Below are positions 2 to 60,314 of a stretch of 64,000 bases of DNA, piece after piece. The stretch covers positions 124,001-188,000 of IMG/VR virus record IMGVR_UViG_3300020477_001008; one strand, 5' to 3'. The notes below the pieces were generated by a model. It searched no databases and had not been told where the DNA came from. It worked only from the letters and a program-made list of their open reading frames with translations. The translations under genes were made by a program, and so were the position numbers. The stretch's first letter is position 1, and every line of letters begins with the position of its first letter.

Positions 2-166
2 TTTACAACTAATAATATAGGTGATAAAATTGGTATGAAATGGGGCGATCCTAAATTAGCAATAGGTTGGTTACCTGTTGGAAGAATGATAACAAATATT
101 GATTACCAAGAATTAATAGGTATTAATGAAATTAAAAAAGTTGACTATTTAGAAAAAACAAGTTAG
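2..166 (+). CDS. 3' end of a gene entering from the left edge (unknown function)
   Basis: Open frame from position 2 (FTTNNIGDKIGMKWGDPKLAIGWLPVGRM...KTS) to TAG at 164-166; not in the ORF track. Confidence 0.6.
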   Translation, partial: FTTNNIGDKIGMKWGDPKLAIGWLPVGRMITNIDYQELIGINEIKKVDYLEKTS

Positions 167-169
167 TAT
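141..169 (+). promoter_or_regulatory. sigma70-type promoter; ATG of dNMP kinase lies 5 nt after the -10
   Basis: TTGACT(141-146)-N17-TAGTAT(164-169)-N5-ATG(175). Confidence 0.55.
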
Positions 170-174
170 ATATT

Positions 175-804
175 ATGATAGTTGGATTAGTAGGTTTTAT
201 AGGTTCAGGAAAAGATTCAGTAGCAAAACATTTTGAAGAAAGTGGTTTTACAAGAGATTCTTTTGCGGCGCCATTAAAAGATGCTGTATCAAGTATATTC
301 AATTGGCCACGTGATATGTTAGAAGGCGATACAGATAAGAGTAGAGCATTTCGAGAAATGAGAGATACGTGGTGGTCTAGCAAATTAGAAGATAAAGGCT
401 TTACACCAAGATGGGCTTTACAATACATTGGTACAGAAATATTAAGAGATCAATTTAATCATAATATTTGGCTTCATAGTTTAGAAAATAGATATATGGC
501 TAAAGGTAGAAAACAAACTATTGTTAGTGATTGTAGATTTAAAAATGAAGTTGGATTAATTAAAACTTTAGGTGGATATGTAGTTAGAGTTAAAAGAGGG
601 CCAGATCCACATTGGTACGAAATGGCTAAAGAAGCCGCTTCAGGCGATAAATTTGCACAACATAGTTTATATGAAATGGGCGTACATCAAAGTGAATGGG
701 ACTGGGTTAATACTAGAGTAGATTTTGTAGTTGAAAATTCAGGATCATTAGATGATCTATCAAAAGGTGTTCAGAACATTGTCGCTCAAATTAATAAAAA
801 TTAA
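175..804 (+). CDS. deoxynucleoside monophosphate kinase (T4 gp1-like)
   Basis: N-terminal P-loop GFIGSGKD, SFAAPLK, PRWALQYIGTE and IVSDCRFKNE motifs. Confidence 0.9.
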   Translation: MIVGLVGFIGSGKDSVAKHFEESGFTRDSFAAPLKDAVSSIFNWPRDMLEGDTDKSRAFREMRDTWWSSKLEDKGFTPRWALQYIGTEILRDQFNHNIWLHSLENRYMAKGRKQTIVSDCRFKNEVGLIKTLGGYVVRVKRGPDPHWYEMAKEAASGDKFAQHSLYEMGVHQSEWDWVNTRVDFVVENSGSLDDLSKGVQNIVAQINKN

Positions 805-1095
805 TTAAAACGACAAATGCTCATCAGTTTCTAATAGTGGTAAACTTGTTGAAGCAACAGGTTCTATATCTAAAGCATCATATTCTGCTCTAGTAATATT
901 CCATTCTTCTGTTATAACTAAATCACTACCAACAATTTCAGATTTAAAATTTATTCTTCCATTTTCAGTAGCCCAAGTTTGATAGTCTTTACCATACTTG
1001 TTCTCGTAGTACTGTGAACCAGTACCATTTTCTTGTCTGCCTGCTACTAAATCTATTGCACCGGCAGAACCGTCAGTTTTCCAAGAAATTTTCAT
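805..1095 (-). CDS. hypothetical protein, tandem paralog A
   Basis: 96 aa; shares ISWKTDGS.GA, GSD.VITEEW.I.RAEYDAL and LP..ET..HLSF with the 1125..1397 protein. Confidence 0.8.
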   Translation of the reverse strand: MKISWKTDGSAGAIDLVAGRQENGTGSQYYENKYGKDYQTWATENGRINFKSEIVGSDLVITEEWNITRAEYDALDIEPVASTSLPLLETDEHLSF

Positions 1096-1124
1096 TGTTA
1101 CTTCCTTACTTTAAAAATTTAAAA

Positions 1125-1397
1125 TTACGCAAAAGATAAATGATCGCTAGTTTCAACAACTGGTAATGCACTACCATCAGCTGAATGATCAATACCTAAT
1201 GCATCATATTCTGCTCTTGAGATGGACCATTCTTCAGTAATAACGATGTCACTACCAACTTCTTCCCATCTGTAATCTGTTCTTCCGTTAGCATCGGCCC
1301 AAGATCTGTAACTAGTATGCTTATCACCGTTTTCTAACCAATTTTTTACTGTGTCAACTGCGCCTGTTGAACCATCAGTTTTCCAAGATATCATCAT
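1125..1397 (-). CDS. hypothetical protein, tandem paralog B
   Basis: 90 aa; SD AAGGAG upstream; obvious paralog of 805..1095. Confidence 0.8.
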   Translation of the reverse strand: MMISWKTDGSTGAVDTVKNWLENGDKHTSYRSWADANGRTDYRWEEVGSDIVITEEWSISRAEYDALGIDHSADGSALPVVETSDHLSFA

Positions 1398-1435
1398 AGT
1401 ATAATGCTCCTTTTTAATAATATATATTATGTTTG

Positions 1436-1443
1436 TATTTATA
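1436..1443 (-). promoter_or_regulatory. T4-type late promoter TATAAATA driving the paralog pair
   Basis: Reverse complement of tatttata at 1436-1443 is the T4 late consensus. Confidence 0.6.
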
Positions 1444-1471
1444 CAGTAATATATAAAATTTAAGTGATTTA

Positions 1472-1968: not shown

Positions 1969-2355
1969 CTAAGGTTTATCAGGCATTAATCCGCCTTGCT
2001 TCCAACCTATTTCTTCTACTGCTTTTATACGACCACAGTTAGCACAAATAGTTTTTAAATTGTTCCAACTAGCATTTTTTAAATTACCATCTATATGATA
2101 AACATCCATTTGTGCAGGATGTTTAGATTTAAATGCACATTTTTCACATATAGACTTTTTTCTATAACCAGCTTTTTCCCAAGAGCTTTTAAAACCAGTC
2201 TTTAATCCTAGACCTTCTTTAATACATTGGTCACACTTACTACGATAGTAGATTTTACCTTTTCTTTTGTAGTTAAAGGCACTCGGCCTCTGTTTACATT
2301 TAGAGCATAAGGGTCTTACGTGCTTTATTTCACTGGTGTCGTTTATATCTTCCAT
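1969..2355 (-). CDS. Zn-finger / HNH-like protein
   Basis: Three CxxC pairs plus HIDGN...NL.T.CANC, HNH-like but lacking the last His; TAAATA-N6-ATG. Confidence 0.6.
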
Positions 2356-2489
2356 ATATTGTATTTAATACCTTTAAAGGCGATCTTGAATAGGGTACTT
2401 TTTGCAGAAATACAATAAATATAAGCATTAACATAGGACTAGTTTATATTATTAATATAACAGAATATAAGCAGGGAGGATAATAGATT

Positions 2490-5562: not shown

Positions 5563-5637
5563 ATTACCTTTAATAAATTTTTTGCCTAGGCATTAATTTA
5601 GTAAAGTTGTAAATATTAATATAAGGAGCATTTTAAA

Positions 5638-6234
5638 ATGGCAACACTTTCAAAATTTGGTGTACCGATAGACGGATCAACAGGACGTGGTGGTATCTTA
5701 CAACCTAAATTAAAATATAGATTTAGAGTTAGATTCACAGGTTTTGGATCTGTAGGACAATCTCCATTGCAACTTACACAACAAGTGATGAACATAACTA
5801 GACCTAAAGTTTCTCACGAGGAAGTACCTATTCACTCATATAACTCAATCGCTTATATGCAAGGTAAACATACTTGGGAAGCTATCAACATTACATTACG
5901 TGATGATATTAATAATAATATTTCAAAACTAGTTGGTGGACAAGTACAGAAACAAATGAACCACTTTGAACAAACTTCTGCAATATCAGGTTCAAGATAT
6001 AAATTTGGCACTAAGATTGAAATCTTAGATGGTACAAATAATACTGAACTAGAGCAGTGGGATTTAGAGGGTTGTTTCTTGCAAAACGTTGATTACTCAG
6101 ACGGTGACTACGCAGTATCAGAACCAGTTCAAGTTATCTTGACGCTGAAATATGATAATGCTATTCATACAGCACCAGGTGATACAATATTCCCATTCAG
6201 TTCGCTTTCGGCTTTTAGTGGCTCGGGAGTATAA
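5638..6234 (+). CDS. tail tube protein (gp19-like)
   Basis: Follows the sheath gene; QPKLKYRFRV, GKHTWEAINITLRDD, GCFLQNVDYS and LTLKYDNA tube-like pattern. Confidence 0.9.
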   Translation: MATLSKFGVPIDGSTGRGGILQPKLKYRFRVRFTGFGSVGQSPLQLTQQVMNITRPKVSHEEVPIHSYNSIAYMQGKHTWEAINITLRDDINNNISKLVGGQVQKQMNHFEQTSAISGSRYKFGTKIEILDGTNNTELEQWDLEGCFLQNVDYSDGDYAVSEPVQVILTLKYDNAIHTAPGDTIFPFSSLSAFSGSGV

Positions 6235-7930: not shown

Positions 7931-7951
7931 TAACCCTGGTTAAATAACTGT

Positions 7952-8380
7952 ATGGCACAGTTTCATAGAGGCACATTTAAACCTAAAAATCCATCGAAGT
8001 ATGCTGGAAAGCGACTTCCAATATATAGGTCTGGTTGGGAATTAACATTTATGCGAATGTGTGATAACCATCCTGCTGTTTTAAGTTGGGCAAGTGAACC
8101 AGTAAGAATACCATATCGTAATCCTTTCACTGGAAAATATACAATGTATGTTCCAGATTTTATAATGGTATATCAAAACAAAAGTGGAAAGAAAATTGGT
8201 GAGCTTGTTGAAATAAAACCAAAAGCACAAACACTAGTTGAACAAGCTAAAACAAGAAATGATAAAATGAAAATCCTATTAAACAGAGAAAAGTGGAAAG
8301 CGGCTGGAGAATGGGCAAAAAGAAAAGGATTAAGATTTAGAATTATAAATGAAGATTCAATTTATTCAATTAAAAAATAA
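7952..8380 (+). CDS. head completion protein (T4 gp4-like, TnsA-type nuclease fold)
   Basis: G.FKPKNPSKY, YRSGWE..FM..CD, WASE...IPY, Y.PDF, VEIKP and KW.AA. Confidence 0.9.
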   Translation: MAQFHRGTFKPKNPSKYAGKRLPIYRSGWELTFMRMCDNHPAVLSWASEPVRIPYRNPFTGKYTMYVPDFIMVYQNKSGKKIGELVEIKPKAQTLVEQAKTRNDKMKILLNREKWKAAGEWAKRKGLRFRIINEDSIYSIKK

Positions 8381-8381
8381 C

Positions 8382-8410
8382 TTGTTATTGTGGATAAATT
8401 GTGTTATGAT
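8382..8410 (+). promoter_or_regulatory. sigma70-type promoter with extended -10; ATG 5 nt downstream
   Basis: TTGTTA-N17-TGn-TATGAT(8405-8410)-N5-ATG(8416). Confidence 0.55.
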
Positions 8411-8415
8411 ATGAT

Positions 8416-8976
8416 ATGAATAAAAAATTAGAAGATACATTTGATTTACCAAGTATGGAAGAAGCTTTGGAAAATGCTAAAGATAAAGAGCAAAAATCTG
8501 AAAGCAAAGAGAAAGTAGAAAAACCAGCTGACGAAAAGGTAATTGAAGAGCTTAAAATTAAAAAAGCACTAACAACAGCAGAAAAAATTGATAGAGCATT
8601 ACCACAAGTTAAAGACTTAGAAACTCACGATGAAGATATGGACGTGTATTCAGATGAAGCTATGAAGTCATATAAAGAATTAATGGATTTAGGTATGAAT
8701 TCTGAGGCTAGACACGCCGGTAAAATGTTTGAAGTTGCGGCTACTATGCTTAAAAATGCAGTAGAATCTAAGAATGCAAAAGCTGATAAAAAGCTTAGAA
8801 TGATTGAATTACAGCTTAAAAAACAGCGGGTAGATCAGTGGGATAAACGTGATGATAAGCAAGATGAAGTAATAGAAGGTGAAGGATATGTGGTTGGAGA
8901 CCGTAATAAGCTACTAGATCAGCTAATTCAGAAGGTTCAGGAAACCGACTCAGAATCCGATAAGGAGGATAAATAA
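8416..8976 (+). CDS. helical protein, possibly small terminase subunit (gp16-like)
   Basis: RHAGKMFEVAATMLK resembles the gp16 HPRAYEV..QLIK motif; remote similarity only. Confidence 0.45.
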   Translation: MNKKLEDTFDLPSMEEALENAKDKEQKSESKEKVEKPADEKVIEELKIKKALTTAEKIDRALPQVKDLETHDEDMDVYSDEAMKSYKELMDLGMNSEARHAGKMFEVAATMLKNAVESKNAKADKKLRMIELQLKKQRVDQWDKRDDKQDEVIEGEGYVVGDRNKLLDQLIQKVQETDSESDKEDK

Positions 8977-8980
8977 TTAT

Positions 8981-9640
8981 ATGAAGACATTTACACAATA
9001 TCTATCTGAAGCGGTTAAAGAAATTCCAGTAAGAATTAAACTGGCTACAGATTTATCAGACGATATGATTGACATTATTGAGTCAGAATTAGCTCGTTAT
9101 GATGTAGTTAATGTTGCAAAACCAGTAAAAACTATCGTACAAGAACATCCATTAGATTTTGGTACTAAAATTAGAAATGCTGAAGTTGTTATAATTGACG
9201 CTACAGTAAGAATGCCAATATCTCCAGAAACGTTTAGAAGAAACTTATCTGATAAGTTAGGTATACCATATGATTACGTTGTAGTCAAAGGTCCTAATGA
9301 TCCATTAGAAGCTGAGAATGAAGCTGAAGTAAAAAGACAAGGTAGTACAGGTGAAGACTATGAACCTAAAATGGGTCAAGATTATACAGAAGAAGAAAGA
9401 GGCGAATCAGGTGATAAGGTTGCTGGTGAGAAATTTAAAGCTGAGTTTTTAAAAACTTTAGCAGACAACAAATCAAAAAATCCAGACAGAGCTCAAGTAG
9501 AAGTTGATGGTCCTTTAAGTGCTGAGACACCTAAAAAGGAAGATGATACTAGTCAGCCTAAAGAAGATGACAAAAAAGCAGTATCCCCATATCAAACTAA
9601 AAAAACTATATCTTTTCCAAATCACCCAAAGAAAGGATAA
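8981..9640 (+). CDS. hypothetical protein with capsid-targeting-like N-terminus
   Basis: MKTFTQYLSE matches the T4 internal-protein CTS pattern (e.g. MKTYQEFIAE); SD GGAGG. Confidence 0.7.
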   Translation: MKTFTQYLSEAVKEIPVRIKLATDLSDDMIDIIESELARYDVVNVAKPVKTIVQEHPLDFGTKIRNAEVVIIDATVRMPISPETFRRNLSDKLGIPYDYVVVKGPNDPLEAENEAEVKRQGSTGEDYEPKMGQDYTEEERGESGDKVAGEKFKAEFLKTLADNKSKNPDRAQVEVDGPLSAETPKKEDDTSQPKEDDKKAVSPYQTKKTISFPNHPKKG

Positions 9641-12121: not shown

Positions 12122-12165
12122 TACACATACAAATTAGCACATACAAAAATTGCGTAAATACACTT

Positions 12166-13290
12166 ATGTTTAATATTTTAACTCTAGACAAAGTAAGAAA
12201 AATTGAAGTAGAGACTACTACCTACTGTAACGCAGGATGTCCTCATTGTGCAAGACATAAACCAAATACAAGTATATTGCAAGACAATATGGAAATGGAA
12301 CATCTTAATTCTGAGTTAATTTATAAACTTAAAGATGACTTTGGTGAACAAACATCAAAAATGGATATATGGTATGTAGGTAATTTAGGTGATTCATTAA
12401 TGCACCCTCATATGGAAAATATGTGGGATTTTACTGCTAAAAATTTTAGATATACTGAAATGGAAACTAATGGTGGTGCAAGAAAAAAAGACTTTTGGAA
12501 AAATTTAGGAAACATTAGTAAAACAAATGGTAATGCTATGATGCTTTTCTCTATTGATGGTTTAGAAGATACTAATGAAATATATAGAAAAAAAGTAAAG
12601 TGGGACGCTGTAATGGAAAATGTTCAAGCTTATATTGGTGCTGGAGGATTAGCTACTTGGAAATGGTTAATTTTTAAACACAATGAACATCAGGTAGAAG
12701 AAGGAAAAGAGTTAGCAAGAAAATTAGGATTTGCAGAATTTATACCTCAATATGCAACACGATTTGAACAAAAAACATATGATGCTACACCAAAGAATGT
12801 TAATGAAAATGTTAAAAAGAGTTTAGGAAAAGATAACCTTGTTAAGCTCCAAGAATCAGAAGTACAACACGCATCAAATATTTCTGAAGTAACTTCTAAA
12901 AAATTAAAGCAAGTTAATTTTGATAATTCAATATTAAAAGTAGATTGCAAATATATTAAAAAACAACGTATGTATTTGAATGCTAGAGGTAGAGTATGGC
13001 CTTGTTGTTGGCATTCAACTTGGGATCAATTTAATGATCATAGACATATGGATCCATTAATATTACCTCATTATAAAAGAGGATTCAATAATTATCATAC
13101 AAAATCGATGTCTGAAATATTTAATGATTCAGCTTGGAAAGAAATGACCGATGCTTGGGAAACAGAATCAGTAAATGAAAGAGGAAAACAACCAATGAGT
13201 ATATGTTATCGTAAATGTATGAATAAAAAATGGGAAGCTTTATGTAATATTAAAGATTTGGAAAATAAGGCAGTTTTTGCAAATCATTAA
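12166..13290 (+). CDS. radical SAM protein with C-terminal SPASM/twitch domain
   Basis: CNAGCPHC, FSIDGLE; C-terminal CKY...VWPCCW...CYRKC. Confidence 0.9.
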   Translation: MFNILTLDKVRKIEVETTTYCNAGCPHCARHKPNTSILQDNMEMEHLNSELIYKLKDDFGEQTSKMDIWYVGNLGDSLMHPHMENMWDFTAKNFRYTEMETNGGARKKDFWKNLGNISKTNGNAMMLFSIDGLEDTNEIYRKKVKWDAVMENVQAYIGAGGLATWKWLIFKHNEHQVEEGKELARKLGFAEFIPQYATRFEQKTYDATPKNVNENVKKSLGKDNLVKLQESEVQHASNISEVTSKKLKQVNFDNSILKVDCKYIKKQRMYLNARGRVWPCCWHSTWDQFNDHRHMDPLILPHYKRGFNNYHTKSMSEIFNDSAWKEMTDAWETESVNERGKQPMSICYRKCMNKKWEALCNIKDLENKAVFANH

Positions 13291-13310
13291 ATACGCATAT
13301 AAATACTAGT

Positions 13311-14915: not shown

Positions 14916-14932
14916 AACAGATAAATACTAAT

Positions 14933-24588: not shown

Positions 24589-24603
24589 TCTCAGTTGTAT
24601 AAT
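24575..24603 (+). promoter_or_regulatory. sigma70 promoter; uvsW ATG 5 nt after the -10
   Basis: TTGCAA(24575-80)-N17-TATAAT(24598-603)-N5-ATG(24609). Confidence 0.65.
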
Positions 24604-24608
24604 AAGAA

Positions 24609-29006: not shown

Positions 29007-29016
29007 AAATATTAAT

Positions 29017-37963: not shown

Positions 37964-38001
37964 TACTTGATCTTTGATAATAAATTTAGTATATTATTAG
38001 T

Positions 38002-38754: not shown

Positions 38755-38765
38755 ATAACTGTACT

Positions 38766-44334: not shown

Positions 44335-44351
44335 GACAATAAATAATTTAG

Positions 44352-45772: not shown

Positions 45773-45792
45773 TAACAGTTAAATAGTAGTGT

Positions 45793-46998
45793 ATGGACAC
45801 TACTAATAATAAATTTTTTTGTTTTTATCCCTTTCGTGCGATTGATGTATTAGCAGATTCGTCTGTGGTACCTTGTTGTAGATTTGATGGAAGGCACGAC
45901 AAAAGCTTACAATATGTTAATGATAAAAATTCTATAACTGATGCGTTTAATTCTGATTACTTTAATAACTTAAGAAAAAAAATGTTAGCTGGTGAAAAAG
46001 TTAACGGTTGCTGGAAATGTTATAAAGAAGACGAAGCAGGTATTAAAAGTATGAGGCTTGGCTCTGATGAATTTATGGAGCAAACTACAGATGTAGGATT
46101 AGAATTTGTAGAATTAGAATCAGGTAGGTTTTGTAATTTAAAATGTAGATCGTGTAGCCCAGCAGTTTCAAGTGGATTTCATAATGAAGTTAAGTCTTCA
46201 AAATTTATGGCTGAACATTTTGGAATAGATTTAAACAATGAAATATTAGATCCTGCAAATCAATTAAACAAATCGTTTTTATATATTTCAAAAGAACAAG
46301 CACAGAAAATAAAATATATTAAAGTTACAGGTGGGGAACCTCTATTAAGTGAATATTTTTTAAAGTATATTCAAAATCTTAATGAATGGGGTTTGTCAAA
46401 AAATATCACTTTAGAAATCTATACTAATGCATCTTTTCTACCAAAACAAAAGCTCTCAGATGCGTTAAAACCTTTTAAAAAAATTTACTTGTTTATGAGT
46501 ATTGATGCTATAGGTAAAAAATCTGATTATTTAAGATCAGGTAGCAATTGGACTACAATGGAAAAAGTTGCAAAGCATTGGTATGATTTATCAACACAAA
46601 TGAATATGGAATTAAATGTTAGTACTACAATATCTATCTATAATGTTTTATATCTAAAAGAATTAATTGATTGGATACAACAAACTATTAAAATTTCTTG
46701 GCCAAGTATAAATTTTGTACATAATCCTTCGTATATGTGTGTATCAAGCTTTAATGTTGATATTAGAAATGAAATACTTAATACACTACAAAATACTTGG
46801 GACGAAAAAACATTAACAAGTAGGCAAGCCAGAGAATATAAAAAAATTATAAATTTTGTTGAAAATACTACAGAATCTATACCTCCTCACTATTTTTTTG
46901 AAACTACAGAAACAATAGATAAAATTAGAAATGAAGATTGGAAACAACTATTTCCGGAGTTATACAGCTTATTAAGTAGGTATAAAAACAGTATATAA
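45793..46998 (+). CDS. radical SAM protein with N-terminal twitch domain
   Basis: FCFYPF...PCCRF...GCWKCY; CNLKCRSC; VTGGEPLL; SIDAIG..YLR. Confidence 0.9.
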   Translation: MDTTNNKFFCFYPFRAIDVLADSSVVPCCRFDGRHDKSLQYVNDKNSITDAFNSDYFNNLRKKMLAGEKVNGCWKCYKEDEAGIKSMRLGSDEFMEQTTDVGLEFVELESGRFCNLKCRSCSPAVSSGFHNEVKSSKFMAEHFGIDLNNEILDPANQLNKSFLYISKEQAQKIKYIKVTGGEPLLSEYFLKYIQNLNEWGLSKNITLEIYTNASFLPKQKLSDALKPFKKIYLFMSIDAIGKKSDYLRSGSNWTTMEKVAKHWYDLSTQMNMELNVSTTISIYNVLYLKELIDWIQQTIKISWPSINFVHNPSYMCVSSFNVDIRNEILNTLQNTWDEKTLTSRQAREYKKIINFVENTTESIPPHYFFETTETIDKIRNEDWKQLFPELYSLLSRYKNSI

Positions 46999-47006
46999 AT
47001 ACTGTT

Positions 47007-47291
47007 ATGCCAGCGGTAACAAGATTAGGAGATGTATGTACAGGTCACGGGTGTTTTCCCTCTAGACCAAATGTGAGTGCTTCTCCGAATGTATTTGTAA
47101 ATGGAATTCCAGTTCATAGAGTAGGTGATTCCTGGGATGTTCATTGTTGTGGAGTTTGCCACTCAGGTGTATTAGCCAGTGGATCATCAACAGTATTTGC
47201 AAATGTAAAACAAGTAGGTAGAATTGGTGATGCTGTAGATTGTGGTAGCTCAGTAGCAAGTGGTTCTGGAAACGTATACGCAGGAGGATAA
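47007..47291 (+). CDS. PAAR spike-tip protein (gp5.4-like)
   Basis: MPAVTRLGD.CTGH, VFVNG.PVHRVGD..H, GS.TVF.N...GR.GD..CG. Confidence 0.93.
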   Translation: MPAVTRLGDVCTGHGCFPSRPNVSASPNVFVNGIPVHRVGDSWDVHCCGVCHSGVLASGSSTVFANVKQVGRIGDAVDCGSSVASGSGNVYAGG

Positions 47292-49568: not shown

Positions 49569-49607
49569 TAGTAGTTAAGTTTCTATTAACTACCCTTTAA
49601 ATACAAA

Positions 49608-50069
49608 GTGTCAAGCAGTAAGAGAGGCATAACCGCAATCTTCGTAGCATTAATGTTACTCATTGCAACTATACCTTTGAATCTTCATTCCAAGGCTAGT
49701 GCAAGTTCTGACAATTTTATCATAGATTTTAGAATTAATGTTTCGTATGGATTAGGTTGGCGAGTAGATACTCCAGATCCAATGACAATTATACCAGGTA
49801 AAGAATACAAAGTTAATTTAATGGCAGTAAATGATATGGATTCTACTAAAATTGCTGAAATTATGTATGGGTATTTGCCCCCTGAGTTTGCAAGATATTT
49901 TTTATTAGTAGAATGTTTTTGTTATGATACTATTAAATTAAAAGCAAAAAGAATAATTGAATTGCCAGTTGTTTTTATTATTGATCCAGCTATATTAAAA
50001 GATAGAAAATTTAGGAAAGATAAAAATATAACAATAAGATTCAATTTCTACCCACAGATAAAACGTTGA
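49608..50069 (+). CDS. cytochrome c oxidase copper chaperone CtaG/Cox11-like
   Basis: N-terminal TM anchor, Cu-binding ECFCY motif, LPVVFIIDP; GTG start. Confidence 0.72.
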   Translation: MSSSKRGITAIFVALMLLIATIPLNLHSKASASSDNFIIDFRINVSYGLGWRVDTPDPMTIIPGKEYKVNLMAVNDMDSTKIAEIMYGYLPPEFARYFLLVECFCYDTIKLKAKRIIELPVVFIIDPAILKDRKFRKDKNITIRFNFYPQIKR

Positions 50070-53887: not shown

Positions 53888-54352
53888 ATGGGTAAACATT
53901 TTAGTACAAAACATTACGGACATAATATTGGGTTGAGTGCAGTTTTTAGACAACCAAACGCAGACCATTCACATTGTCATTTTTTACACGGATATAGTTT
54001 AGCATTTACATTTACATTTGGTTGTGATGAGTTAGATAATAAAAATTGGGCAGTTGATTTTGGAGGACTAAAACCTTTAAAAAAATGGCTTGAAGACTCA
54101 TTTGATCATAAACTTTGCTTGGATAAAAACGATCCACATCTAGAAAAATTTAAAGAATTAGAAGCAATGGATCTTGCACAGATTAGAATTTTTGATGGTG
54201 TTGGAGCAGAAAAATTTGCCGAACACGCCTTTAATTTTGCAGATAATTTAATTAAAGAAGCAACAAATAATCGTTGTTATGTAGTAAAAGTAGAATGTGC
54301 AGAACACGGAGCCAATTCGGCAATATATCAAATAACTGAAAAAAACCTATAA
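53888..54352 (+). CDS. queD: 6-carboxy-5,6,7,8-tetrahydropterin synthase QueD
   Basis: FRQ..AD.SHC.FLHGY, W.VDFGGLK, FDHK, GAEKFAE and ECAEHGANSAIY. Confidence 0.9.
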   Translation: MGKHFSTKHYGHNIGLSAVFRQPNADHSHCHFLHGYSLAFTFTFGCDELDNKNWAVDFGGLKPLKKWLEDSFDHKLCLDKNDPHLEKFKELEAMDLAQIRIFDGVGAEKFAEHAFNFADNLIKEATNNRCYVVKVECAEHGANSAIYQITEKNL

Positions 54353-54360
54353 ATAGTTAT

Positions 54361-56058
54361 ATGTTATTAACTTTGCTAACATTATTGTCAGCATTATCTA
54401 TAAGTGCGGTAGCGATCTTCTATTCTATAGCAGGTCTGGCCGCGATATTTGCCGGTGCGGCTGTTCCTATTATGATAATGGGTACTGTTTTAGAAGTAGG
54501 TAAATTAGTTACCGCTTCTTGGCTATATCAGAATTGGAAGAAGTCACCATTCTTTTTAAAGTTCTATCTCACGATCGCAGTAGTAGTTTTAATGTTTATA
54601 ACGTCTATGGGTATCTTTGGTTTCTTATCTAAAGCACACGTAGAACAAACAGCACCGTCGACACTTATTACACAAAAGATAGAACAGATAGATGAAAGAC
54701 TAGTTCGTGAAAATGCTAAAGTAGAAAGATTTACATTAGATTTAGAAAGATTAAACACAGGTACTAACGTAAGAATAGATACATTAGTAGATACAGAACA
54801 AGGCAAATTAGATTCAATTTATTCACGTATTGATAAAGAGATTGCTGATATTACAGCAATTGCTAATACAAGTATTAATACGCAAAAAGAAAGAATAACT
54901 CAAGCTAAAGAAAGAGCTGATAGAGATATTGCACAATTAAATGAAGCTAGAGCAAAAACTTGGGGTAAGAAAAGAATTGATGATGAAATAGCAAAGATTA
55001 GAGATAATGAATTAGCTGTGGCGGCCGCGGCACAAAAAGAAATAATAAAAATACAAGAAAAATTAAATGTTGATATACAAGCTATTAAAGACAAATATCA
55101 AGCTAGTATTGATGCTATTACAACCAATGTAACAAAGTTAACAGGCGAAGCTGAAGCTACAACAGGTGAAATAGAAGTCAAAGCAGATGAACTTGAAGGA
55201 AAACTTACAGTTGTATATGCTAATATTGATGATTTAAATGAAGAAAAATTTGTACTACAATCACAAATTAAAGAGATAGAAGTTGAAGTAGGACCAATAA
55301 AATACATAGCAGAATTTGTATATGGTATGGAAGCAGATGCTGATCTATTAGAAAAATCAGTTAGATGGGTTATTATTATAATTATATTTGTATTTGATCC
55401 ACTTGCAGTATTATTATTGATTGCGGCAAACTTCTCTTTAAAAAGAAGATTTGGTAGTGATATGGAAGAAATGGTTGAAGCCAAATTTGGTGGCGGAAAA
55501 TTAGATGACTATTGGAAAGATAGATATCAAGATATGAAAGAAGATCTTTCAAGATTTAATAAACAAAAAGAACACCAAGATACTACACAAGAAGAACATT
55601 CAGTTAGTGCCTCATATAATTTAGGTGAAGTTAATGTTGATAATACTGATCAATCAGTTGAAGATTATTTAGATGAAGTACAATATGATATAGATCCTAA
55701 AGAATTTGAAGGTGTAGAAGAAAACGATTTAGGTCATCCAAATTATGATTTAATTAAAGATGAAGAAACAGGTAAAAAGAAATATTGGGAAGACCAAAAT
55801 AAAGAAGAACAGCTAGAAAGATTTAAACAGCGAGAAGAAGAAGAAAAACAAGCACTAGAAGAATATTCACGTAAAGCTAGGGAAGAAGATGGCTTTGATC
55901 CAGATGAAGTTGAAGGATATGAAGAATTTAATAAAAATTACGAGAATAAAGAAGATGACGAATCAGTTAGTATTGCTGAAGATGAAGTAACGCCAACTAT
56001 AATTGAAGATGTTAAGATTACAGATCTATCCGATGAGGATGTTAAAAAAAAGACTTAA
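54361..56058 (+). CDS. membrane protein with long periplasmic coiled coil and acidic tail
   Basis: N-terminal TMs (SIAGLAAIFAG..., GIFGFLSKAH), coiled coil, VGPIKY, IIFVFDPLAVLLLIAAN; ends just after A_AAA_AAG. Confidence 0.8.
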   Translation: MLLTLLTLLSALSISAVAIFYSIAGLAAIFAGAAVPIMIMGTVLEVGKLVTASWLYQNWKKSPFFLKFYLTIAVVVLMFITSMGIFGFLSKAHVEQTAPSTLITQKIEQIDERLVRENAKVERFTLDLERLNTGTNVRIDTLVDTEQGKLDSIYSRIDKEIADITAIANTSINTQKERITQAKERADRDIAQLNEARAKTWGKKRIDDEIAKIRDNELAVAAAAQKEIIKIQEKLNVDIQAIKDKYQASIDAITTNVTKLTGEAEATTGEIEVKADELEGKLTVVYANIDDLNEEKFVLQSQIKEIEVEVGPIKYIAEFVYGMEADADLLEKSVRWVIIIIIFVFDPLAVLLLIAANFSLKRRFGSDMEEMVEAKFGGGKLDDYWKDRYQDMKEDLSRFNKQKEHQDTTQEEHSVSASYNLGEVNVDNTDQSVEDYLDEVQYDIDPKEFEGVEENDLGHPNYDLIKDEETGKKKYWEDQNKEEQLERFKQREEEEKQALEEYSRKAREEDGFDPDEVEGYEEFNKNYENKEDDESVSIAEDEVTPTIIEDVKITDLSDEDVKKKT

Positions 56059-56264: not shown

Positions 56265-57553
56265 GCGATAAAGAGATTAAAATGAAATGCTCGTTCTGTG
56301 AAAAGACTAGAGCCGAATCACATAAATTAATAGCAGGACCTAAAGAAACATTTATTTGCGATGAATGTGTAAAACTTTGCCACGATATTTTAAAAGAAGG
56401 AACAATTGAAAACGAAACAAAAGAGTTTGCTATTCCTGATCCAAAAAAATTACACGGATATTTAAATGAACACGTAATTGGTCAAGATAGAGCAAAGAAA
56501 ATTGTTAGTGTAGCAGTTTATAACCATTATAAAAGAATTGTTAATAATTTAATTAAAGAAGATGGGCAAGACGAAATTGAAAAATCTAATGTTATGATGT
56601 TAGGACCATCAGGTGTTGGAAAAACACTTTTAGCTAAAAAGGTTGCTGAATACGTAAATGTACCATTTGCTATTGCTGATGCAACAACAATAACAGAATC
56701 AGGTTATGTAGGTGATGACGTAGAGAATATTGTAACAAGATTATTGCAACAAGCAGACTTTAATGTTGAAAAAGCTGAACGTGGAATTATATACATTGAT
56801 GAAATAGATAAAAAAGCAAAAAAAGGTGAGAACGTATCAATTACTAGAGATGTATCTGGTGAAGGTGTACAACAAGCTTTATTAAAAATTATTGAAGGAA
56901 CAACTGTTAGAGTTCCGCCACAAGGTGGAAGAAAACATCCTGGTGCAGAAATGATTGAAGTTGATACATCAAATATATTGTTTATAGTTGGTGGAGCATT
57001 TGTTGGTATAGATAAAGTTATTAATAAAAGGGCTAATAAGTCAGCAGGTATTGGATTTAATCAACGAGTAGAAACTGTTGATACAGGATTTGATGAATGC
57101 GAACCAGATGATTTAATTAAGTATGGATTAATACCTGAACTTGTTGGAAGGTTACCAGTTATAGTAGGTTGTCATAATTTAGATAAAAAAGATTTAAAAG
57201 CAATTATGCTTGATGTAAAAAATTCATTGATTAAACAATCTCAACGTTTATTTAAAATGGAAAATGTAAATTTAATTATAACTGAAGATGCAGTAGATTA
57301 TGTAGTAGATGAAGCACACGAAAAGAAATTAGGTGCTAGAGGATTAAAATCTGTGTTAGAAAAAGGTTTATTAGAAATACAATATGACTTACCAGAATAC
57401 AGAGATGGTGGAGTTAGTGAAATTACAGTTACAGAAAAAACGCTCAAAGGAGAAAAACCGATGCTCACTTATGAGTTTGATGCTAAAGATATAAAAGCTA
57501 AAGAAACAAAAAAAGGGAAAAAGGAAGATAACGGTACAACAGGAAAAGAATGA
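56261..57553 (+). CDS. clpX: ATP-dependent Clp protease ATP-binding subunit ClpX
   Basis: Zn domain CSFC...ICDEC; Walker A GPSGVGKT; pore loop GYVG; IDEIDK; RDVSGEGVQ; RKH loop; IGF loop (AGIGF). Confidence 0.97.
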
Positions 57554-58104
57554 AACAAAGATATAGTAATTACGAGTATCAAAAAAAGAAAGCATTAATT
57601 AACGAGAATATTAGAAGTAAAGAAGTTCGTTTAATATTAGAATCATCACAAGAAATAGTAACTACACAAGAAGCATTAAGATTATCTAGAGAGCAAGATT
57701 TAGATCTAGTTTGTGTTAGCACAAAATCAAATCCACCTATATGTAAAATTATGGATTATGGGAAACATCTATATGAACAAAAAAAGAAACAAAAAATTGC
57801 TGATAAAAAACAAAGAGAAGCTATTGTGGATACAAAAGAAATCCAGTTTAGACCAGCAACTGGAATTGGAGATCTTAAAGTAAAAGCTAAAAAGGTACAA
57901 GAGTTTATAGATGATGGAGATAAGGTAAAATTAGTAATGAAATTGCGTGGCAGGGAAAATGCTATGAAGGATTTTGCTATGGAACAATTCAAAAAATTTG
58001 TTGATTTAATTGAGAATTATGACTACGATTATAGGCCAAATATACAGGGAAATAAAATACTTGCAATTTTAAAGAAAGGTGTTATAATAAAGAACAATGA
58101 GTGA
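57550..58104 (+). CDS. infC: translation initiation factor IF3
   Basis: INENIR..EVRLI, DLDLV.VS....[28 protein letters not shown]....RGRE. Confidence 0.95.
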
Positions 58105-58453
58105 TAAACCAAGGAAAAAATACGACATCAAAAATTTCTCTAATTTTGGGAAATTTGAGCAAAAGCGAGATCGAAGACCAAGACGTGAGCCAGATCCACC
58201 TGGTTTAGCAGTTACAGTTCACGGCGACGATGTAATGAAAGCTTATAGAAGGCTTAAAAAGAAACTAATGAAAGATAACCTTATGGATACAATAAGGGAT
58301 AAAAGATATTACAAAAAGCCAAGTGAAATTAGACAAGAAAAATTAAAAGTGCAAAGAAGGAATATGCAAAAAGCTCAAAGAGATAGAGCTATGCAATATG
58401 GTATAAGATATAAAAACTATGATCCTAGCACAGCCAAAACACGTGGCTATTAA
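58097..58453 (+). CDS. rpsU: 30S ribosomal protein bS21 with N- and C-terminal extensions
   Basis: VTVHGDDVMKAYRRLKKKL...RYYKKPSE.R core; own promoter TTGCAA-N16-TGn-TATAAT-N8-ATG. Confidence 0.85.
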   Translation: MSDKPRKKYDIKNFSNFGKFEQKRDRRPRREPDPPGLAVTVHGDDVMKAYRRLKKKLMKDNLMDTIRDKRYYKKPSEIRQEKLKVQRRNMQKAQRDRAMQYGIRYKNYDPSTAKTRGY

Positions 58454-58779
58454 TGTTCGACCAAATAAAGTTTCATCAGCACCCCACAGAGAATAAAGGC
58501 AAACAAGCTATAATAGATTTTGTAGATTACAAAATGAGTATAGTATGCTCACCTACATCTTATGGTGGAGATAAAGGTTTGTTTGAAATTGCAGTATTTG
58601 ATAAAGCTGGAGAGTTTGTTGATTTAAAAGGTATTAGTGATAAAGATGATCAAGTACACGGTTGGTTAAGAGAAGATGAAGTTGTATTAGTAATAGAAAA
58701 ATTGTGTGAAATAACAGATATGGATGTTAGATTAGTTTTATTGCGTTCAGCATTTAGGGAGAACAAAAATGATAGATGA
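58453..58779 (+). CDS. hypothetical phage protein
   Basis: SYGG..GLFEIAV...V.GWL pattern. Confidence 0.7.
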   Translation: MFDQIKFHQHPTENKGKQAIIDFVDYKMSIVCSPTSYGGDKGLFEIAVFDKAGEFVDLKGISDKDDQVHGWLREDEVVLVIEKLCEITDMDVRLVLLRSAFRENKNDR

Positions 58780-58921
58780 ACTTGTAGAACAAATAGCTAG
58801 AATGAACAAAGACGAAAGAAATGAATTTGTTGAAACTCTAGTTAAAAAATGGCCTGATTTATCAGAGTCAATTTATTTTTTATTAAATGTAAATTTAATG
58901 GAGAAGGAGAACATTAAATAG
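58769..58921 (+). CDS. small hypothetical protein (50 aa, not in the ORF track)
   Basis: SD AGGGAG; MIDELVEQIARMNKDERNEFVETLVKKWPDL... Confidence 0.55.
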   Translation: MIDELVEQIARMNKDERNEFVETLVKKWPDLSESIYFLLNVNLMEKENIK

Positions 58922-58934
58922 ATGTTTAATTCAA

Positions 58935-59010
58935 GGGCGGTTAGCTCAGTTGGTAGAGCATCTCGTTTACACCGAGGGGGTCAAAGGTTCGAGTCCTTTA
59001 CTGCCCACCA
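58935..59010 (+). tRNA. tRNA-Val(TAC)
   Basis: GGGCGGT...ACTGCCC-A-CCA; anticodon loop TTTACAC; TTCGAGT. Confidence 0.97.
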
Positions 59011-59014
59011 TTAC

Positions 59015-59090
59015 GGAGTATTAGTGTAGCGGTTAACACGTCGCCCTGTCACGGCGAAGACCACGGGTTCGAATCCCGTATACTCCGCCA
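59015..59090 (+). tRNA. tRNA-Asp(GTC)
   Basis: GGAGTAT...ATACTCC-G-CCA; anticodon arm TCGCC-CTGTCAC-GGCGA. Confidence 0.97.
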
Positions 59091-59108
59091 TCAACAATAA
59101 ATATTATT

Positions 59109-60314
59109 ATGCACAATATTCGAAAACAATTTCCCATATTTGATAAAACATTACCTAACGGTAAAAAATTAGTATATTTAGATAGTGCTAATTCTTCACA
59201 AAAACCGAAAAGGGTATTAGATAGATTATATGATTTTTATGCACAAGAATATAGTAGTGTTGGGAGAAGTATACACCAGTTAAGTACAGGTGCAAGTAAA
59301 TGTTTAAATGATAGTAGAGAAGCAGTTGCAAAATTTTTAAATGCTGGTTCTGTAGATGAAATTGTTTTTACTAAAAGTGCCACAGAAGCTATTAATACGA
59401 TTGCAGAAAGTTTTGGCAGAACTCAACGTGATCATTATGAAATAATTTGTTCTGAATTAGAACATAATTCAAATTATCTTCCTTGGCATTTGCAAAGAGC
59501 TCATAAAAATGCAACAATTAAATTTATTCCTTTAAAAGATGATTATACATTAGATGTAGATAAGCTAGAAAGTTTAATTACTAAAAAAACTAAAATGATA
59601 GCAATAACTCATTTATCAAATGTTACTGGAGAAGTAATTAATGTTAAAAAAATATGTGAGATAGCACACAGTAAAGGAATAGCAGTTTTTGTAGATGGTA
59701 CACAAGGTGCACCACATATGAAAGTTGATGTACAAGATATTGATTGTGATTTTTATTGTATTAGTGGTCATAAAATGTACGGACCTTCAGGCGTTGGGGC
59801 TTTGTACGCCAAAGAAAAATGGTTAGATGAATTATCGCCTTTTCAAGGTGGTGGTGGAACGGTACTTGATGCAACGCAAAGTGTTATTCAATATGCAGAT
59901 GGACCAAAAAAATGGGAAGCTGGAACACACCCAGTTGCTGAAATTGTAGCATTAAAAGAAGCAATTGATTTTTATTATGATGTTGGATTTGATAATATGT
60001 TAAATCACGAAAAACAATTAGTTGAGTATTTGTATGAAAAATTAGCATCTGATAATGATATTGAGTTACTATGTGGTAATAAGCCTAATGCTGTTTTATC
60101 ATTTAATATTAAAGGAATACATCACGAAGATATGTCAATGTTTTTAGATGAATATGGTATTGCTACAAGACCAGGTCAACATTGTGCTATGTTATTCCAT
60201 AAAAGGTACAGTTTAACTGGTTCTGTTAGAGTATCATTAGGTGTATATAATACCAAAGAAGAAATGGACTTTTTCTTACAGTCTTTGGGTGAAATTAAGA
60301 AGAGATTATCCTAA
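59109..60314 (+). CDS. sufS: SufS-type cysteine desulfurase
   Basis: VYLDSA.SSQKP, ELEHNSN, PLP lysine SGHKMYGP, catalytic RPGQHCA, R.SLG.YNT.EE. Confidence 0.93.
   Translation: MHNIRKQFPIFDKTLPNGKKLVYLDSANSSQKPKRVLDRLYDFYAQEYSSVGRSIHQLSTGASKCLNDSREAVAKFLNAGSVDEIVFTKSATEAINTIAESFGRTQRDHYEIICSELEHNSNYLPWHLQRAHKNATIKFIPLKDDYTLDVDKLESLITKKTKMIAITHLSNVTGEVINVKKICEIAHSKGIAVFVDGTQGAPHMKVDVQDIDCDFYCISGHKMYGPSGVGALYAKEKWLDELSPFQGGGGTVLDATQSVIQYADGPKKWEAGTHPVAEIVALKEAIDFYYDVGFDNMLNHEKQLVEYLYEKLASDNDIELLCGNKPNAVLSFNIKGIHHEDMSMFLDEYGIATRPGQHCAMLFHKRYSLTGSVRVSLGVYNTKEEMDFFLQSLGEIKKRLS

What the first reader, a model, noticed from the sequence alone, without database searches (positions are those of the whole stretch)
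141..59111. Genome-wide leaderless-mRNA architecture for both early and late genes
Seen: the late motif TAAATA is followed by exactly 5 nt and then ATG at 7952, 12166, 13311, 14933, 29017, 47007, 54361 and 59109. Spacing is N4-N8 at 49608, 2355(-), 45793, 38766 and 15272. Sigma70 -10 boxes are followed by N5-N8 and then ATG at 175, 8416, 24609, 30818, 33077, 38002 and 58097. These starts lack SD motifs. Established: the T4 late TATAAATA occupies about -13 to -6, so N5 places +1 on the A of ATG. Inference: about 20 genes (terminase, helicase, primase, UvsW, SufS, PAAR and others) are made as leaderless mRNAs. IF3 and bS21, which this phage encodes, are known to affect leaderless versus SD-led initiation. 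The phage may therefore retune initiation, for example with an IF3 variant more permissive to 70S leaderless starts.
Basis: partly seen in the sequence, partly recalled or inferred. Interest (0 to 1): 0.82.

Follow-up and report, generated by a model that had tools for sequence, protein, structure and literature searches.

The report
Promoters fused to start codons (leaderless genes)
In this marine jumbo phage about a quarter of the genes have a promoter element placed so close to the ATG that transcription should begin on the start codon itself, a conserved design that is also seen in a cultured SAR11 phage but still needs transcript mapping to prove.

Summary
TAAATA-N5-ATG occurs 10 times on the + strand, against about 1-2 expected (p about 1e-7), and always at an ORF start. 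Seven gene starts carry a sigma70-like -35/-10 pair ending 5-8 nt before the ATG (7/69 gene starts vs 7/1442 other ATGs).

In 49 related metagenomic loci, 160 of 733 TAAATA motifs sit exactly 5 nt before an ATG, in 23 gene families. T is at -1 in 94%, ATG is the only start codon used, and there is no room for a Shine-Dalgarno (SD) site. The cultured relatives PA5oct and Atu_ph07 use the same motif 20-30 nt upstream of SD-led genes. That argues TAAATA is a T4-type late promoter whose leader has collapsed to zero.

Leaderless mRNA is therefore the best explanation (about 0.75). No transcription start site (TSS) was mapped: the metatranscriptome contigs were too sparse.

"Genome-wide" overstates it. 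About 22 of 80 genes fit, 34 are SD-led, and these include sheath, tube and SSB.

The IF3/bS21 "retuning" idea is not supported. IF3 looks canonical, E. coli data point the opposite way, and Atu_ph07 is reported to encode IF3 and bS21 yet is SD-led.

One new lead: Pelagibacter phage HTVC008M shows the same N5 design at 12 annotated gene starts.

The parts
7941..7954 (+). TAAATA-N5-ATG; TnsA-like endonuclease gene 7952-8380
   Evidence: conserved in 8 related loci
8970..8983 (+). TAAATA-N5-ATG; virion structural protein 8981-9640. The motif overlaps the stop codon of the upstream gene.
   Evidence: conserved in 10 related loci
12155..12168 (+). TAAATA-N5-ATG; radical SAM/SPASM gene 12166-13290
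13300..13313 (+). TAAATA-N5-ATG; large terminase 13311-14915
   Evidence: The motif and N5 spacing are kept in terL homologues down to 56% identity while the flanks diverge.
14922..14935 (+). TAAATA-N5-ATG; 677-aa virion structural protein 14933-16966
   Evidence: 36 related loci keep it
29006..29094 (+). Two TAAATA-N5-ATG sites 75 nt apart in the same frame (ATG 29017 and ATG 29092); virion structural protein ending at 29817
   Evidence: The PA5oct orthologue (L081:36014) is the only PA5oct gene in the sampled region with TATAAATA-N5-ATG.
46996..47009 (+). TAAATA-N5-ATG; PAAR protein 47007-47291
54350..54363 (+). TAAATA-N5-ATG; 565-aa membrane-like protein 54361-56058
59098..59111 (+). TAAATA-N5-ATG; SufS cysteine desulfurase 59109-60314
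44340..44354 (+). TAAATA-N6-ATG; NrdB 44352-45452 (predicted 1-nt leader)
45780..45795 (+). TAAATA-N7-ATG; SPASM/radical SAM gene 45793-46998
38752..38768 (+). TAAATA-N8-ATG; virion structural protein 38766-39557
49598..49610 (+). TAAATA-N4-GTG; CtaG/Cox11 49608-50069. This is the weakest case because of the non-ATG start and the off spacing.
2353..2367 (-). TAAATA-N6-ATG on the minus strand; HNH-like gene 1969-2355
141..177 (+). TTGACT-17-TAGTAT-N5-ATG; dNMP kinase 175-804
8382..8418 (+). TTGTTA-17-TATGAT-N5-ATG; gene 8416-8976
24575..24611 (+). TTGCAA-17-TATAAT-N5-ATG; UvsW helicase 24609-26060
30782..30820 (+). TTGACT-17-TATAAT-N7-ATG; Toprim primase 30818-31816
33042..33079 (+). TTGCGA-17-TATAAT-N6-ATG; DnaB helicase 33077-34480. 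The promoter lies inside the 3' end of the upstream thymidylate synthase gene (TAATG overlap).
   Evidence: The -35, -10 and N6 are kept in 24 distinct relatives, and in L173/L175 the ATG moves together with the promoter.
37967..38004 (+). TTGATC-17-TATATT-N6-ATG; gene 38002-38754
58061..58099 (+). TTGCAA-16-TATAAT-N8-ATG; bS21 gene 58097-58453. The promoter lies inside the 3' end of the IF3 gene.
   Evidence: ATG 58097 is the only in-frame ATG before the S21 domain.
57550..58104 (+). IF3 gene (IF3_N + IF3_C), overlapping the ClpX stop; not itself leaderless
5610..5640 (+). Comparison case: the same TAAATA motif 22 nt upstream of the SD-led tail tube gene (AAGGAG in the leader). Further leadered cases are at 20689, 34509, 40557, 60362 and 1436(-).

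Best explanation
Two promoter classes in this phage are placed directly against start codons, so that RNA polymerase should start on, or within 1-3 nt of, the A of ATG and produce leaderless mRNAs.

The two classes are a sigma70-type -35/-10 class and a -35-less (A)TAAATA class with the geometry of the T4 late promoter. In the late class the spacing is fixed at 5 nt, with T at -1, which places +1 on the A.

These mRNAs would be translated from a 5'-terminal AUG without an SD. Highly expressed genes (sheath, tube, SSB) keep a leader with a strong SD.

What is shown: the motifs, their exact spacing, their conservation, the lack of room for an SD, and ATG-only starts.

What is inferred: the TSS position, the sigma factor that reads TAAATA (a gp55-like sigma, by analogy with relatives), and translation of 5'-AUG mRNAs in the host, probably SAR11.

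A plausible pay-off, also inferred: read-through transcripts carry these ATGs internally with no SD. Translation would then become competent only when the gene's own promoter fires. The design also saves intergenic space.
For: 1. Window statistics.

2. Lineage-wide peak. In 49 dereplicated related loci (743 kb), 160 of 733 TAAATA are followed by ATG at exactly N5 (149 open at least 60 codons), against 8 at N4 and 12 at N6. The N5 sites with long ORFs, counting the window's own, number 159 and fall in 23 protein families.

3. Start-site signature: T at -1 in 94%, pyrimidine in 99%, A at +1, and no -35.

4. Start codon and SD: 115 of 115 N5 genes start with ATG, against 82% of other genes. Only 7% have an SD-like tetramer against 51% of other genes, which is partly forced by the geometry.

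5. Conserved spacing, free sequence. The N5 spacer upstream of terL varies in sequence but not in length down to 56% protein identity. One clade has the same motif further upstream with a leader.

6. The DnaB sigma70 promoter keeps N6 in 24 distinct relatives, and the ATG shifts together with the promoter in L173/L175.

7. Cultured relatives PA5oct and Atu_ph07 carry (GA)TAAATA 20-30 nt upstream of SD-led late genes. TAAATA therefore behaves as a promoter, not a ribosome-binding site.

8. T4 late promoters are TATAAATA at -13 to -6, with a weak -13 position (PMC1524935).

9. gp55-like late sigma factors exist in relatives (Atu_ph07 gp694, GAP32, HTVC008M) and are common in marine viral contigs (PMC6102473).

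10. Precedent: most transcripts of Thermus phages YS40 and Lalka27a are leaderless (bioRxiv 10.64898/2026.04.20.719267). A -10 box adjacent to ORFs, with a spacing requirement, was validated in Deinococcus (PMC12340547).
Against: - No TSS was mapped. Laying four marine metatranscriptomes on 7800-13700 gave only short, low-depth contigs.
- Some of those contigs cross predicted starts (X1 8296-8451 across 8416; an X2 contig across 13311). Read-through or DNA carry-over therefore exists, and these genes are not exclusively leaderless.
- Several promoters lie inside the 3' ends of upstream genes (33077, 58097, 8981), so part of their conservation could come from coding constraint, and translational coupling is an alternative route for those genes.
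- No gp55-like sigma was found in the 64-kb window, and I could not retrieve it from the parent 242.6-kb contig.
- Efficient leaderless translation in the presumed host is unknown.
- N6-N8 cases would carry 1-3-nt leaders.
- TAAATA also precedes genes that are not classically late (nrdB, SufS, radical SAM).
Confidence: 0.75

Rival explanations
1. TAAATA at -11 to -6 is an mRNA-level, non-SD ribosome-binding or enhancer signal, perhaps read by ribosomes carrying the phage bS21. These genes would then be translated from internal positions of polycistronic mRNAs.
For: - The motif sits where an SD would sit.
- The phage encodes bS21 and IF3.
- bS21 is core to pelagimyophages (PMC7029224), and HTVC008M shows the same N5 pattern.
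- Gaps to upstream genes are short, 4-44 nt.
- Some cDNA contigs cross the sites.
Against: - SD-type signals tolerate several nt of spacing variation. Here N5 outnumbers N4 and N6 by more than 13-fold.
- T at -1 / A at +1 is a transcription-start signature.
- The same motif lies 20-30 nt upstream of SD-led genes in this window and in PA5oct and Atu_ph07.
- The motif matches the T4 late promoter in both sequence and position (PMC1524935).
- A second, unrelated promoter class (sigma70 -35/-10) shows the same abutting geometry.
Confidence: 0.08
2. The promoters are real, but the abutting geometry is mainly a by-product of genome compaction. Most protein would come from read-through polycistronic mRNAs, by termination-reinitiation coupling or SD-independent initiation in an AT-rich, unstructured context. 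The short transcripts would contribute little.
For: - Gene packing is tight, with only 4.7% intergenic sequence.
- 11 further genes overlap or abut their upstream gene without an SD.
- The promoters at 33077, 58097 and 8981 are embedded in upstream genes.
- Contigs cross the sites.
Against: - Compaction alone does not predict an exact N5 with T at -1, exclusive ATG use, or retention of N5 while the spacer sequence drifts.
- Many sites have 17-44 nt gaps, where coupling is inefficient.
- Equally compact relatives keep leaders with an SD.
Confidence: 0.12
3. The pattern is a chance product of an AT-rich genome.
For: GC is 32%. TAAATA and TATAAT-like hexamers are common: 47 and 25 TAAATA on the two strands.
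Against: - 10 observed against about 1-2 expected; no shuffle out of 300 reaches 10.
- Odds ratio 23 for the sigma70 class.
- Replicated in 743 kb of relatives.
Confidence: 0.01

Closest known systems
Thermus phages phiYS40 and Lalka27a (leaderless middle/late transcripts)
   Same: Phage-wide use of promoters that place the A or G of the initiator codon at the transcript's 5' end. Late promoters have a distinct -10-type element without a -35 (bioRxiv 10.64898/2026.04.20.719267, which cites the YS40 work).
   Different: Those hosts (Deinococcus-Thermus) are themselves rich in leaderless genes, the promoters have other consensus sequences (for example TAGGGT), and the TSSs were mapped. Here the motif is of the T4 late type, the host is probably an AT-rich marine alphaproteobacterium, only about a quarter of genes are affected, and nothing has been mapped.
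-10 motif adjacent to ORFs in Deinococcus-Thermus (PMC12340547)
   Same: A TANNNT -10 box a few bp upstream of the ORF drives leaderless genes, has a specific spacing requirement, and is boosted by a -35 placed 17 bp upstream. This matches the sigma70-class sites here.
   Different: That is a cellular, phylum-wide feature validated by experiment. This is a phage feature inferred from sequence.
T4-type late promoters (gp55/gp33/gp45)
   Same: Core TAAATA of TATAAATA at -13 to -6, weak conservation of -13, no -35, and location upstream of structural genes (PMC1524935).
   Different: In the sampled relatives (P-SSM4, PA5oct, Atu_ph07) the late motif lies about 19-30 nt upstream of the start, with room for an SD-containing leader. 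That T4 late mRNAs themselves carry SD-containing leaders rests on my own knowledge, as T4 was not examined. Here the leader length is zero at about half of the motif's gene-proximal occurrences. The sigma factor was not located in this genome.
Pseudomonas phage PA5oct and Agrobacterium phage Atu_ph07 (closest cultured relatives; terL 50-54% identical, syntenic)
   Same: Same gene order (dNMP kinase, sheath, tube, terminase, UvsX, primase, DnaB) and the same (GA)TAAATA motif and TTGAC/TATAAT promoters (PMC7318152). A ClpX-IF3 plus bS21 set is described for the Atu_ph07 relative AP-J-162, with bS21 similar to that of Atu_ph07 (PMC11242549).
   Different: Their late genes keep 20-30-nt leaders with an SD. 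Only one PA5oct gene start in the sampled 41 kb has TATAAATA-N5-ATG, and no annotated Atu_ph07 gene start in 42 kb has the N5 site.
Lambda cI mRNA from PRM
   Same: A phage mRNA that begins with AUG and is translated without an SD (PMC10491246).
   Different: That is a single regulatory gene in a temperate phage. Its translation is favoured by ribosomes lacking uS2 and bS21, which runs against the idea that extra bS21 helps.

Membership tests
Leaderless genes (promoter -10 element abutting the start codon) | A -10-type element ending 5-8 nt upstream of the start codon, more often than chance | tested here: met
Leaderless genes (promoter -10 element abutting the start codon) | No Shine-Dalgarno site between promoter and start codon | tested here: met
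   The geometry leaves no room for one. Only 8981 has AAGGAGG, and it ends at -14.
Leaderless genes (promoter -10 element abutting the start codon) | AUG strongly preferred as start codon | tested here: met
   115 of 115 N5 genes start with ATG, and no GTG or TTG appears among the common codons at N5 with an open frame
Leaderless genes (promoter -10 element abutting the start codon) | Mapped primary 5' end on the first base of the start codon | tested here: inconclusive
   only sparse assembled metatranscriptome contigs and no pile-up of ends. A SMART-oligo-tagged 5' end at 9218 has no promoter upstream.
Leaderless genes (promoter -10 element abutting the start codon) | 5'-AUG mRNA is translated in the host | not testable with these tools
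   Needs reporters, toeprinting or ribosome profiling
T4-type late promoter | TATAAATA-like box at -13 to -6, no -35 | tested here: met
   Profile of 146 unique sites: TAAATA fixed by selection, A at -12 in 53%, -13 not conserved, no -35. Positions as given in PMC1524935.
T4-type late promoter | Located upstream of late (virion and packaging) genes | tested here: inconclusive
   Yes for terL, five virion proteins, PAAR and tail tube. But the motif also precedes nrdB, SufS, CtaG, radical SAM genes and an endonuclease. No expression timing is available.
T4-type late promoter | The phage encodes a gp55-like sigma factor (plus gp33 and a clamp) | tested here: inconclusive
   None among the window's proteins. 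Present in Atu_ph07, GAP32 and HTVC008M and in hundreds of marine viral contigs. The parent 242.6-kb contig was not among the 80 loci returned.
Sigma70-type early promoters | -35 TTGACA-like, 16-18 nt spacer, -10 TATAAT-like | tested here: met
   conserved for DnaB. PA5oct uses TTGAC/TATAATA promoters (PMC7318152).
   IF3 57550-58104 (IF3_N + IF3_C) and bS21 58097-58453
   Against: Atu_ph07, reported to carry bS21 (with IF3 in the AP-J-162/Atu_ph07 group, PMC11242549), is SD-led. For: HTVC008M has bS21 and 12 N5 gene starts, while P-SSM4 has one N5 gene start and cyanomyophages as a group lack bS21 (PMC7029224).
   The alignment to E. coli IF3 is full length and keeps the conserved FRP and RGRE motifs. 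The protein belongs to a diverged, mostly unnamed metagenomic clade. Function cannot be read from sequence.

The most novel reading that the evidence does not exclude
T4-superfamily phages of SAR11 from two unrelated lineages have converged on late promoters fused to the start codon. The lineages are this PA5oct-like jumbo clade and the Kyanoviridae pelagimyophage HTVC008M. Both carry phage bS21, and the jumbo clade also carries IF3. This would imply that SAR11 ribosomes, or phage-modified ones, initiate efficiently on a 5'-terminal AUG, and that these phages gate translation by promoter firing. It would also explain why late promoters could not be found in pelagimyophages with the cyanophage method (PMC7029224).
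Probability: 0.3. Interest if true: 0.8.

Novelty: new variant of a known kind. Interest (0 to 1): 0.62.

Why it matters
If the start sites are confirmed, this would be a case of a T4-type late promoter used at zero leader length, and of large-scale leaderless expression in phages of abundant marine Alphaproteobacteria. Until now that strategy has been documented mainly for Thermus phages and for Actinobacteria and Deinococcus-Thermus hosts.

It has practical consequences. Gene callers and promoter finders that expect an SD or a leader will mis-handle these genomes.

It gives a concrete reason why late promoters of pelagimyophages were not found.

It also offers a testable link between transcription timing and translational competence. 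The cultured pair HTVC008M and Pelagibacter ubique HTCC1062 shows the same motif geometry at 12 annotated gene starts, so the key experiment is feasible.

Tried and rejected
1. Near-identity search of 8 kb against GenBank phages found no match. Identity came from a terL tblastn search and from IMG/VR (window = part of IMGVR_UViG_3300020477_001008, 242.6 kb).

2. Transcript evidence. Ten marine metatranscriptome runs hold parts of 7800-13700. Laying four of them gave only 150-700-nt assembled contigs at low depth, with no end pile-ups. One contig carries a template-switch oligo at 9218, but no promoter lies upstream. This says nothing about TSSs.

3. gp55 in this genome. A single-protein scan found only Atu_ph07 itself. 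Two profile scans each found about 590 gp55-like genes, but the parent contig was not among the 80 returned. The short flanks of those loci were uninformative.

4. Host leaderless content. The Pelagibacter loci fetched around sufS are operon-internal and told nothing.

5. The IF3 homologue search did not identify a host. The phage IF3 sits in a separate, mostly unnamed clade, and named cellular IF3s are at most about 52% identical.

6. The HTVC008M major-capsid relatives gave an N5 peak in every GC bin, but it is probably dominated by one or two orthologous sites next to the capsid gene. I therefore did not use it to claim host tracking.

7. Extended -10 (TGn) reading of the late motif: only weak G at -14 and no T at -15. 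Rejected.

8. 15272 (N8) is an internal in-frame ATG, and 49608 is N4 with GTG. I treat both as doubtful members.

Full report
**What the window is.** The window is 64 kb at 32% GC, with nearly all genes on the + strand.
- Pfam and PHROGs identify tail sheath, two tail-tube proteins, T4-type large terminase, gp32-like SSB, UvsX, UvsY, UvsW, primase, DnaB, NrdA/B and ThyX. They also identify many auxiliary genes: SufS, CtaG/Cox11, QueD, SAM decarboxylase and three radical SAM/SPASM proteins. A ClpX-IF3-bS21 block is present.
- TerL is 50-54% identical to the jumbo phages PA5oct, Phosso and Atu_ph07, and the gene order is syntenic with them.
- The window is 100% identical over the DnaB gene to IMG/VR contig 3300020477_001008 (242.6 kb).
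- Rfam finds an alphaproteobacterial two-piece tmRNA and an AdoCbl-II riboswitch.
- The closest cellular SufS proteins are nearly all from Pelagibacter, at 48-52% identity.
- A marine, AT-rich alphaproteobacterial host, probably SAR11, is likely but not proven.

- TAAATA-N5-ATG occurs 10 times on the + strand: the eight listed sites plus 8981 and 29092.
- The expectation is a mean of 1.0 at other spacings (Poisson p = 1.5e-7) and 2.0 in dinucleotide shuffles, whose maximum is 6.
- All ten sites open long ORFs, and all ten have T at -1.
- TAAATA is strongly intergenic: 19 of 47 copies lie in 4.7% of the sequence.
- For the sigma70 class, 7 of 69 gene-start ATGs have TTGnnn-16..18-TAnnnT ending 5-8 nt upstream. 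Only 7 of 1442 other ATGs do (odds ratio 23, p = 8e-7).
- Between spacings 0 and 79, seven gene starts fall at N5-8 and six everywhere else.

**How much of the genome is affected.** I classified 80 genes.
- 9 have the late motif at N5.
- 5 have it at N4 or N6-8.
- 7 have a convincing sigma70 promoter at N5-8, plus one doubtful TTG start.
- 34 have an SD-like tetramer.
- 11 overlap or abut the upstream gene without an SD.
- 13 fit none of these.

So about a quarter of genes fit the finding, which is roughly half of those without an SD. The strongest SDs (AAGGAGG and similar) belong to sheath, tube and SSB. "Genome-wide" is therefore too strong. The design is one of two main initiation modes.

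**Comparative evidence for the late class.** TerL homologues were fetched from 80 IMG/VR loci.
- Upstream of terL, TAAATA (or TAAGTA) followed by exactly 5 nt and ATG persists down to 56% protein identity.
- Meanwhile the 5-nt spacer and everything further upstream diverge.
- One clade has the same motif about 25 nt upstream instead.
- Over 49 dereplicated loci (743 kb), 160 of 733 TAAATA motifs are followed by ATG at N5. The neighbouring counts are 8 at N4 and 12 at N6. A broad secondary hump at N17-31 corresponds to leadered genes.
- The N5 sites with long ORFs, counting the window's own, number 159 and fall in 23 protein families.
- The position profile shows T at -1 in 94% (pyrimidine 99%), T at -4 in 68%, A at -12 in 53%, nothing at -13 and no -35.
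- All 115 called genes with the motif at N5 start with ATG. Only 7% have an SD-like tetramer, against 51% of other genes. This is partly forced, since the motif occupies the place where an SD would be.

**Comparative evidence for the sigma70 class.** Upstream of DnaB, the -35 (CTTGCGA/CTTGCAA), the 17-nt spacer length, the -10 (TATAAT/TATAGT) and N6 are kept in 24 distinct relatives.
- These relatives have three different upstream contexts.
- In L173 and L175 the ATG has moved by two codons and the promoter has moved with it.
- Caveat: this promoter lies inside the 3' end of the upstream gene, so some of the conservation may reflect coding constraint.

**Why TAAATA is a promoter and not a ribosome signal.**
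1. The T4 late consensus TATAAATA spans -13 to -6, with a poorly conserved -13; Aeh1 uses CTAAATA from -12 (PMC1524935).
2. In this window the same motif also lies 10-24 nt upstream of SD-led genes (5610, 20689, 34509, 40557, 60362, 1436(-)).
3. In PA5oct and Atu_ph07 the syntenic late genes carry (GA)TAAATA 20-30 nt upstream, with AGGAG or GGAGG in between, and there is no N5 peak. PA5oct has one gene start with N5 (TATAAATA-N5-ATG at L081:36014, the orthologue of window gene 29017), and no annotated Atu_ph07 gene start has it.
4. The sharpness of N5 and the T(-1)/A(+1) pair are start-site properties. An SD-like signal tolerates several nucleotides of play.
5. gp55-like late sigma factors are present in Atu_ph07 (gp694), in most Rak2-like phages (PMC6102473), in GAP32 and in HTVC008M. 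They are abundant in marine viral contigs.

I did not find a gp55-like sigma in the window and could not retrieve it from the parent contig.

**Transcript evidence is lacking.** Ten marine metatranscriptome runs contain parts of 7800-13700. Four were laid on that stretch.
- They gave only short assembled contigs at low depth, with no accumulation of ends.
- Two contigs cross predicted starts (8296-8451 across 8416; one across 13311). Read-through RNA or contaminating DNA therefore exists.
- A contig with a template-switch oligo begins at 9218, where there is no promoter.
- The central inference, that the TSS lies on the ATG, remains untested.

**IF3 and bS21.** Both genes are present and adjacent.
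- IF3 (57550-58104) has both domains and aligns along its length with E. coli IF3, keeping the conserved FRP and RGRE motifs.
- It belongs to a diverged clade made mostly of unnamed metagenomic proteins.
- bS21 (58097-58453) has a 38-residue basic N-terminal extension. Its only possible ATG is the one 8 nt after a TTGCAA-16-TATAAT promoter.
IF3 antagonises start selection on leaderless mRNAs (Tedin et al. 1999, as listed in PMC12340547). Ribosomes lacking uS2 and bS21 translate lambda cI leaderless mRNA better (PMC10491246).
- PMC11242549 reports that Atu_ph07 carries a bS21 gene and that AP-J-162 carries a ClpX-IF3 block and bS21. Yet the sampled Atu_ph07 region is SD-led.
- In favour of some link: bS21 is core to pelagimyophages and absent from cyanomyophages (PMC7029224), and this parallels the next result.

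**A lead beyond the finding.** Pelagibacter phage HTVC008M belongs to the Kyanoviridae, a different T4-superfamily lineage with a known SAR11 host.
- It has 14 TAAATA-N5-ATG sites, against about 1-3 at other spacings.
- 12 of them coincide with annotated gene starts, mostly virion genes.
- 150 kb of the Prochlorococcus phage P-SSM4, from the same family, has three such sites, of which one is a gene start. Its late motifs lie 19-27 nt upstream of starts.
- PMC7029224 reports that the late-promoter search used for cyanomyophages was unsuccessful in pelagimyophages. A zero-length leader could be one reason.
- This suggests the trait follows the host rather than the phage lineage. It rests on one genome per group, and the host of the window's phage is only inferred.

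**Comparison with what is known.** Phage-wide leaderless transcription has been shown by experiment for Thermus phages YS40 and Lalka27a (bioRxiv 10.64898/2026.04.20.719267). A -10 box next to the ORF, with a spacing requirement, has been validated in Deinococcus (PMC12340547). phiKZ early transcripts and AR9 transcripts are not leaderless (PMC8244752, PMC5312081). My searches found no report of T4-type late promoters fused to start codons, nor of leaderless expression in SAR11 phages or in PA5oct-like phages. I therefore file it as a new variant of a known kind.

**Verdict.**
- The leaderless interpretation is well supported by sequence and comparative evidence but unproven at the RNA level (confidence about 0.75).
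- The scope is about a quarter of genes.
- The IF3/bS21 mechanism is speculative.

Noticed in passing
window 18128-20686: A perfect sigma70 consensus promoter (TTGACA-16-TATAAT at 18128) drives an AdoCbl-II riboswitch (18165-18243, 85 bits). It is followed by a DUF6580 membrane protein (18339-18848) and a TonB-dependent receptor with Plug domain (18818-20686). This looks like a phage-borne, B12-responsive uptake operon.
   Followed up: partly
window 48221-48515: Two-piece (permuted) alphaproteobacterial tmRNA, 153 bits; ARAGORN reads the tag peptide as ADENLALAA. This is a host-lineage clue.
   Followed up: partly
window 56261-58453: A ClpX-IF3-bS21 gene block. A ClpX-IF3 neighbourhood and a bS21 gene are described for the Sinorhizobium jumbo phage AP-J-162, with bS21 similar to that of Atu_ph07 (PMC11242549). 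bS21 here has an unusual 38-residue basic N-terminal extension.
   Followed up: partly
window 53797-53842, 50066-50182, 39794-39917: Three near-consensus sigma70 promoters (1 mismatch each) are followed at N5 or N7 by an ATG that opens only a tiny ORF: MRT-stop, 26 codons (upstream of tRNA-Ser) and 29 codons. These could be 5'-terminal mini-ORFs on leadered transcripts, or chance.
   Followed up: no
window 29006-29094: Two TAAATA-N5-ATG units lie 75 nt apart in the same reading frame. They could yield two N-terminal isoforms of a virion protein.
   Followed up: no
window 15258-15274: TAAATA-N8-ATG lies inside, and in frame with, the 14933-16966 gene. It may be an internal start or chance.
   Followed up: no
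L289-L291 (Pelagibacter phage HTVC008M, KC465899.1): 12 annotated gene starts, mostly virion genes, have TAAATA exactly 5 nt before the ATG. Examples are 6280, 18943, 19456, 31132, 75830, 16007(-) and 18916(-). The related Prochlorococcus phage P-SSM4 has one. PMC7029224 reports that late promoters could not be predicted in pelagimyophages.
   Followed up: partly
window 10802-13290 and 45793-46998: Three radical SAM/SPASM-type proteins in one phage window, two of them adjacent and two behind late-type promoters. Their function is unknown.
   Followed up: no
Named cellular IF3s are at most about 52% identical and of mixed phyla. This suggests IF3 has been resident in phages for a long time.
   Followed up: partly
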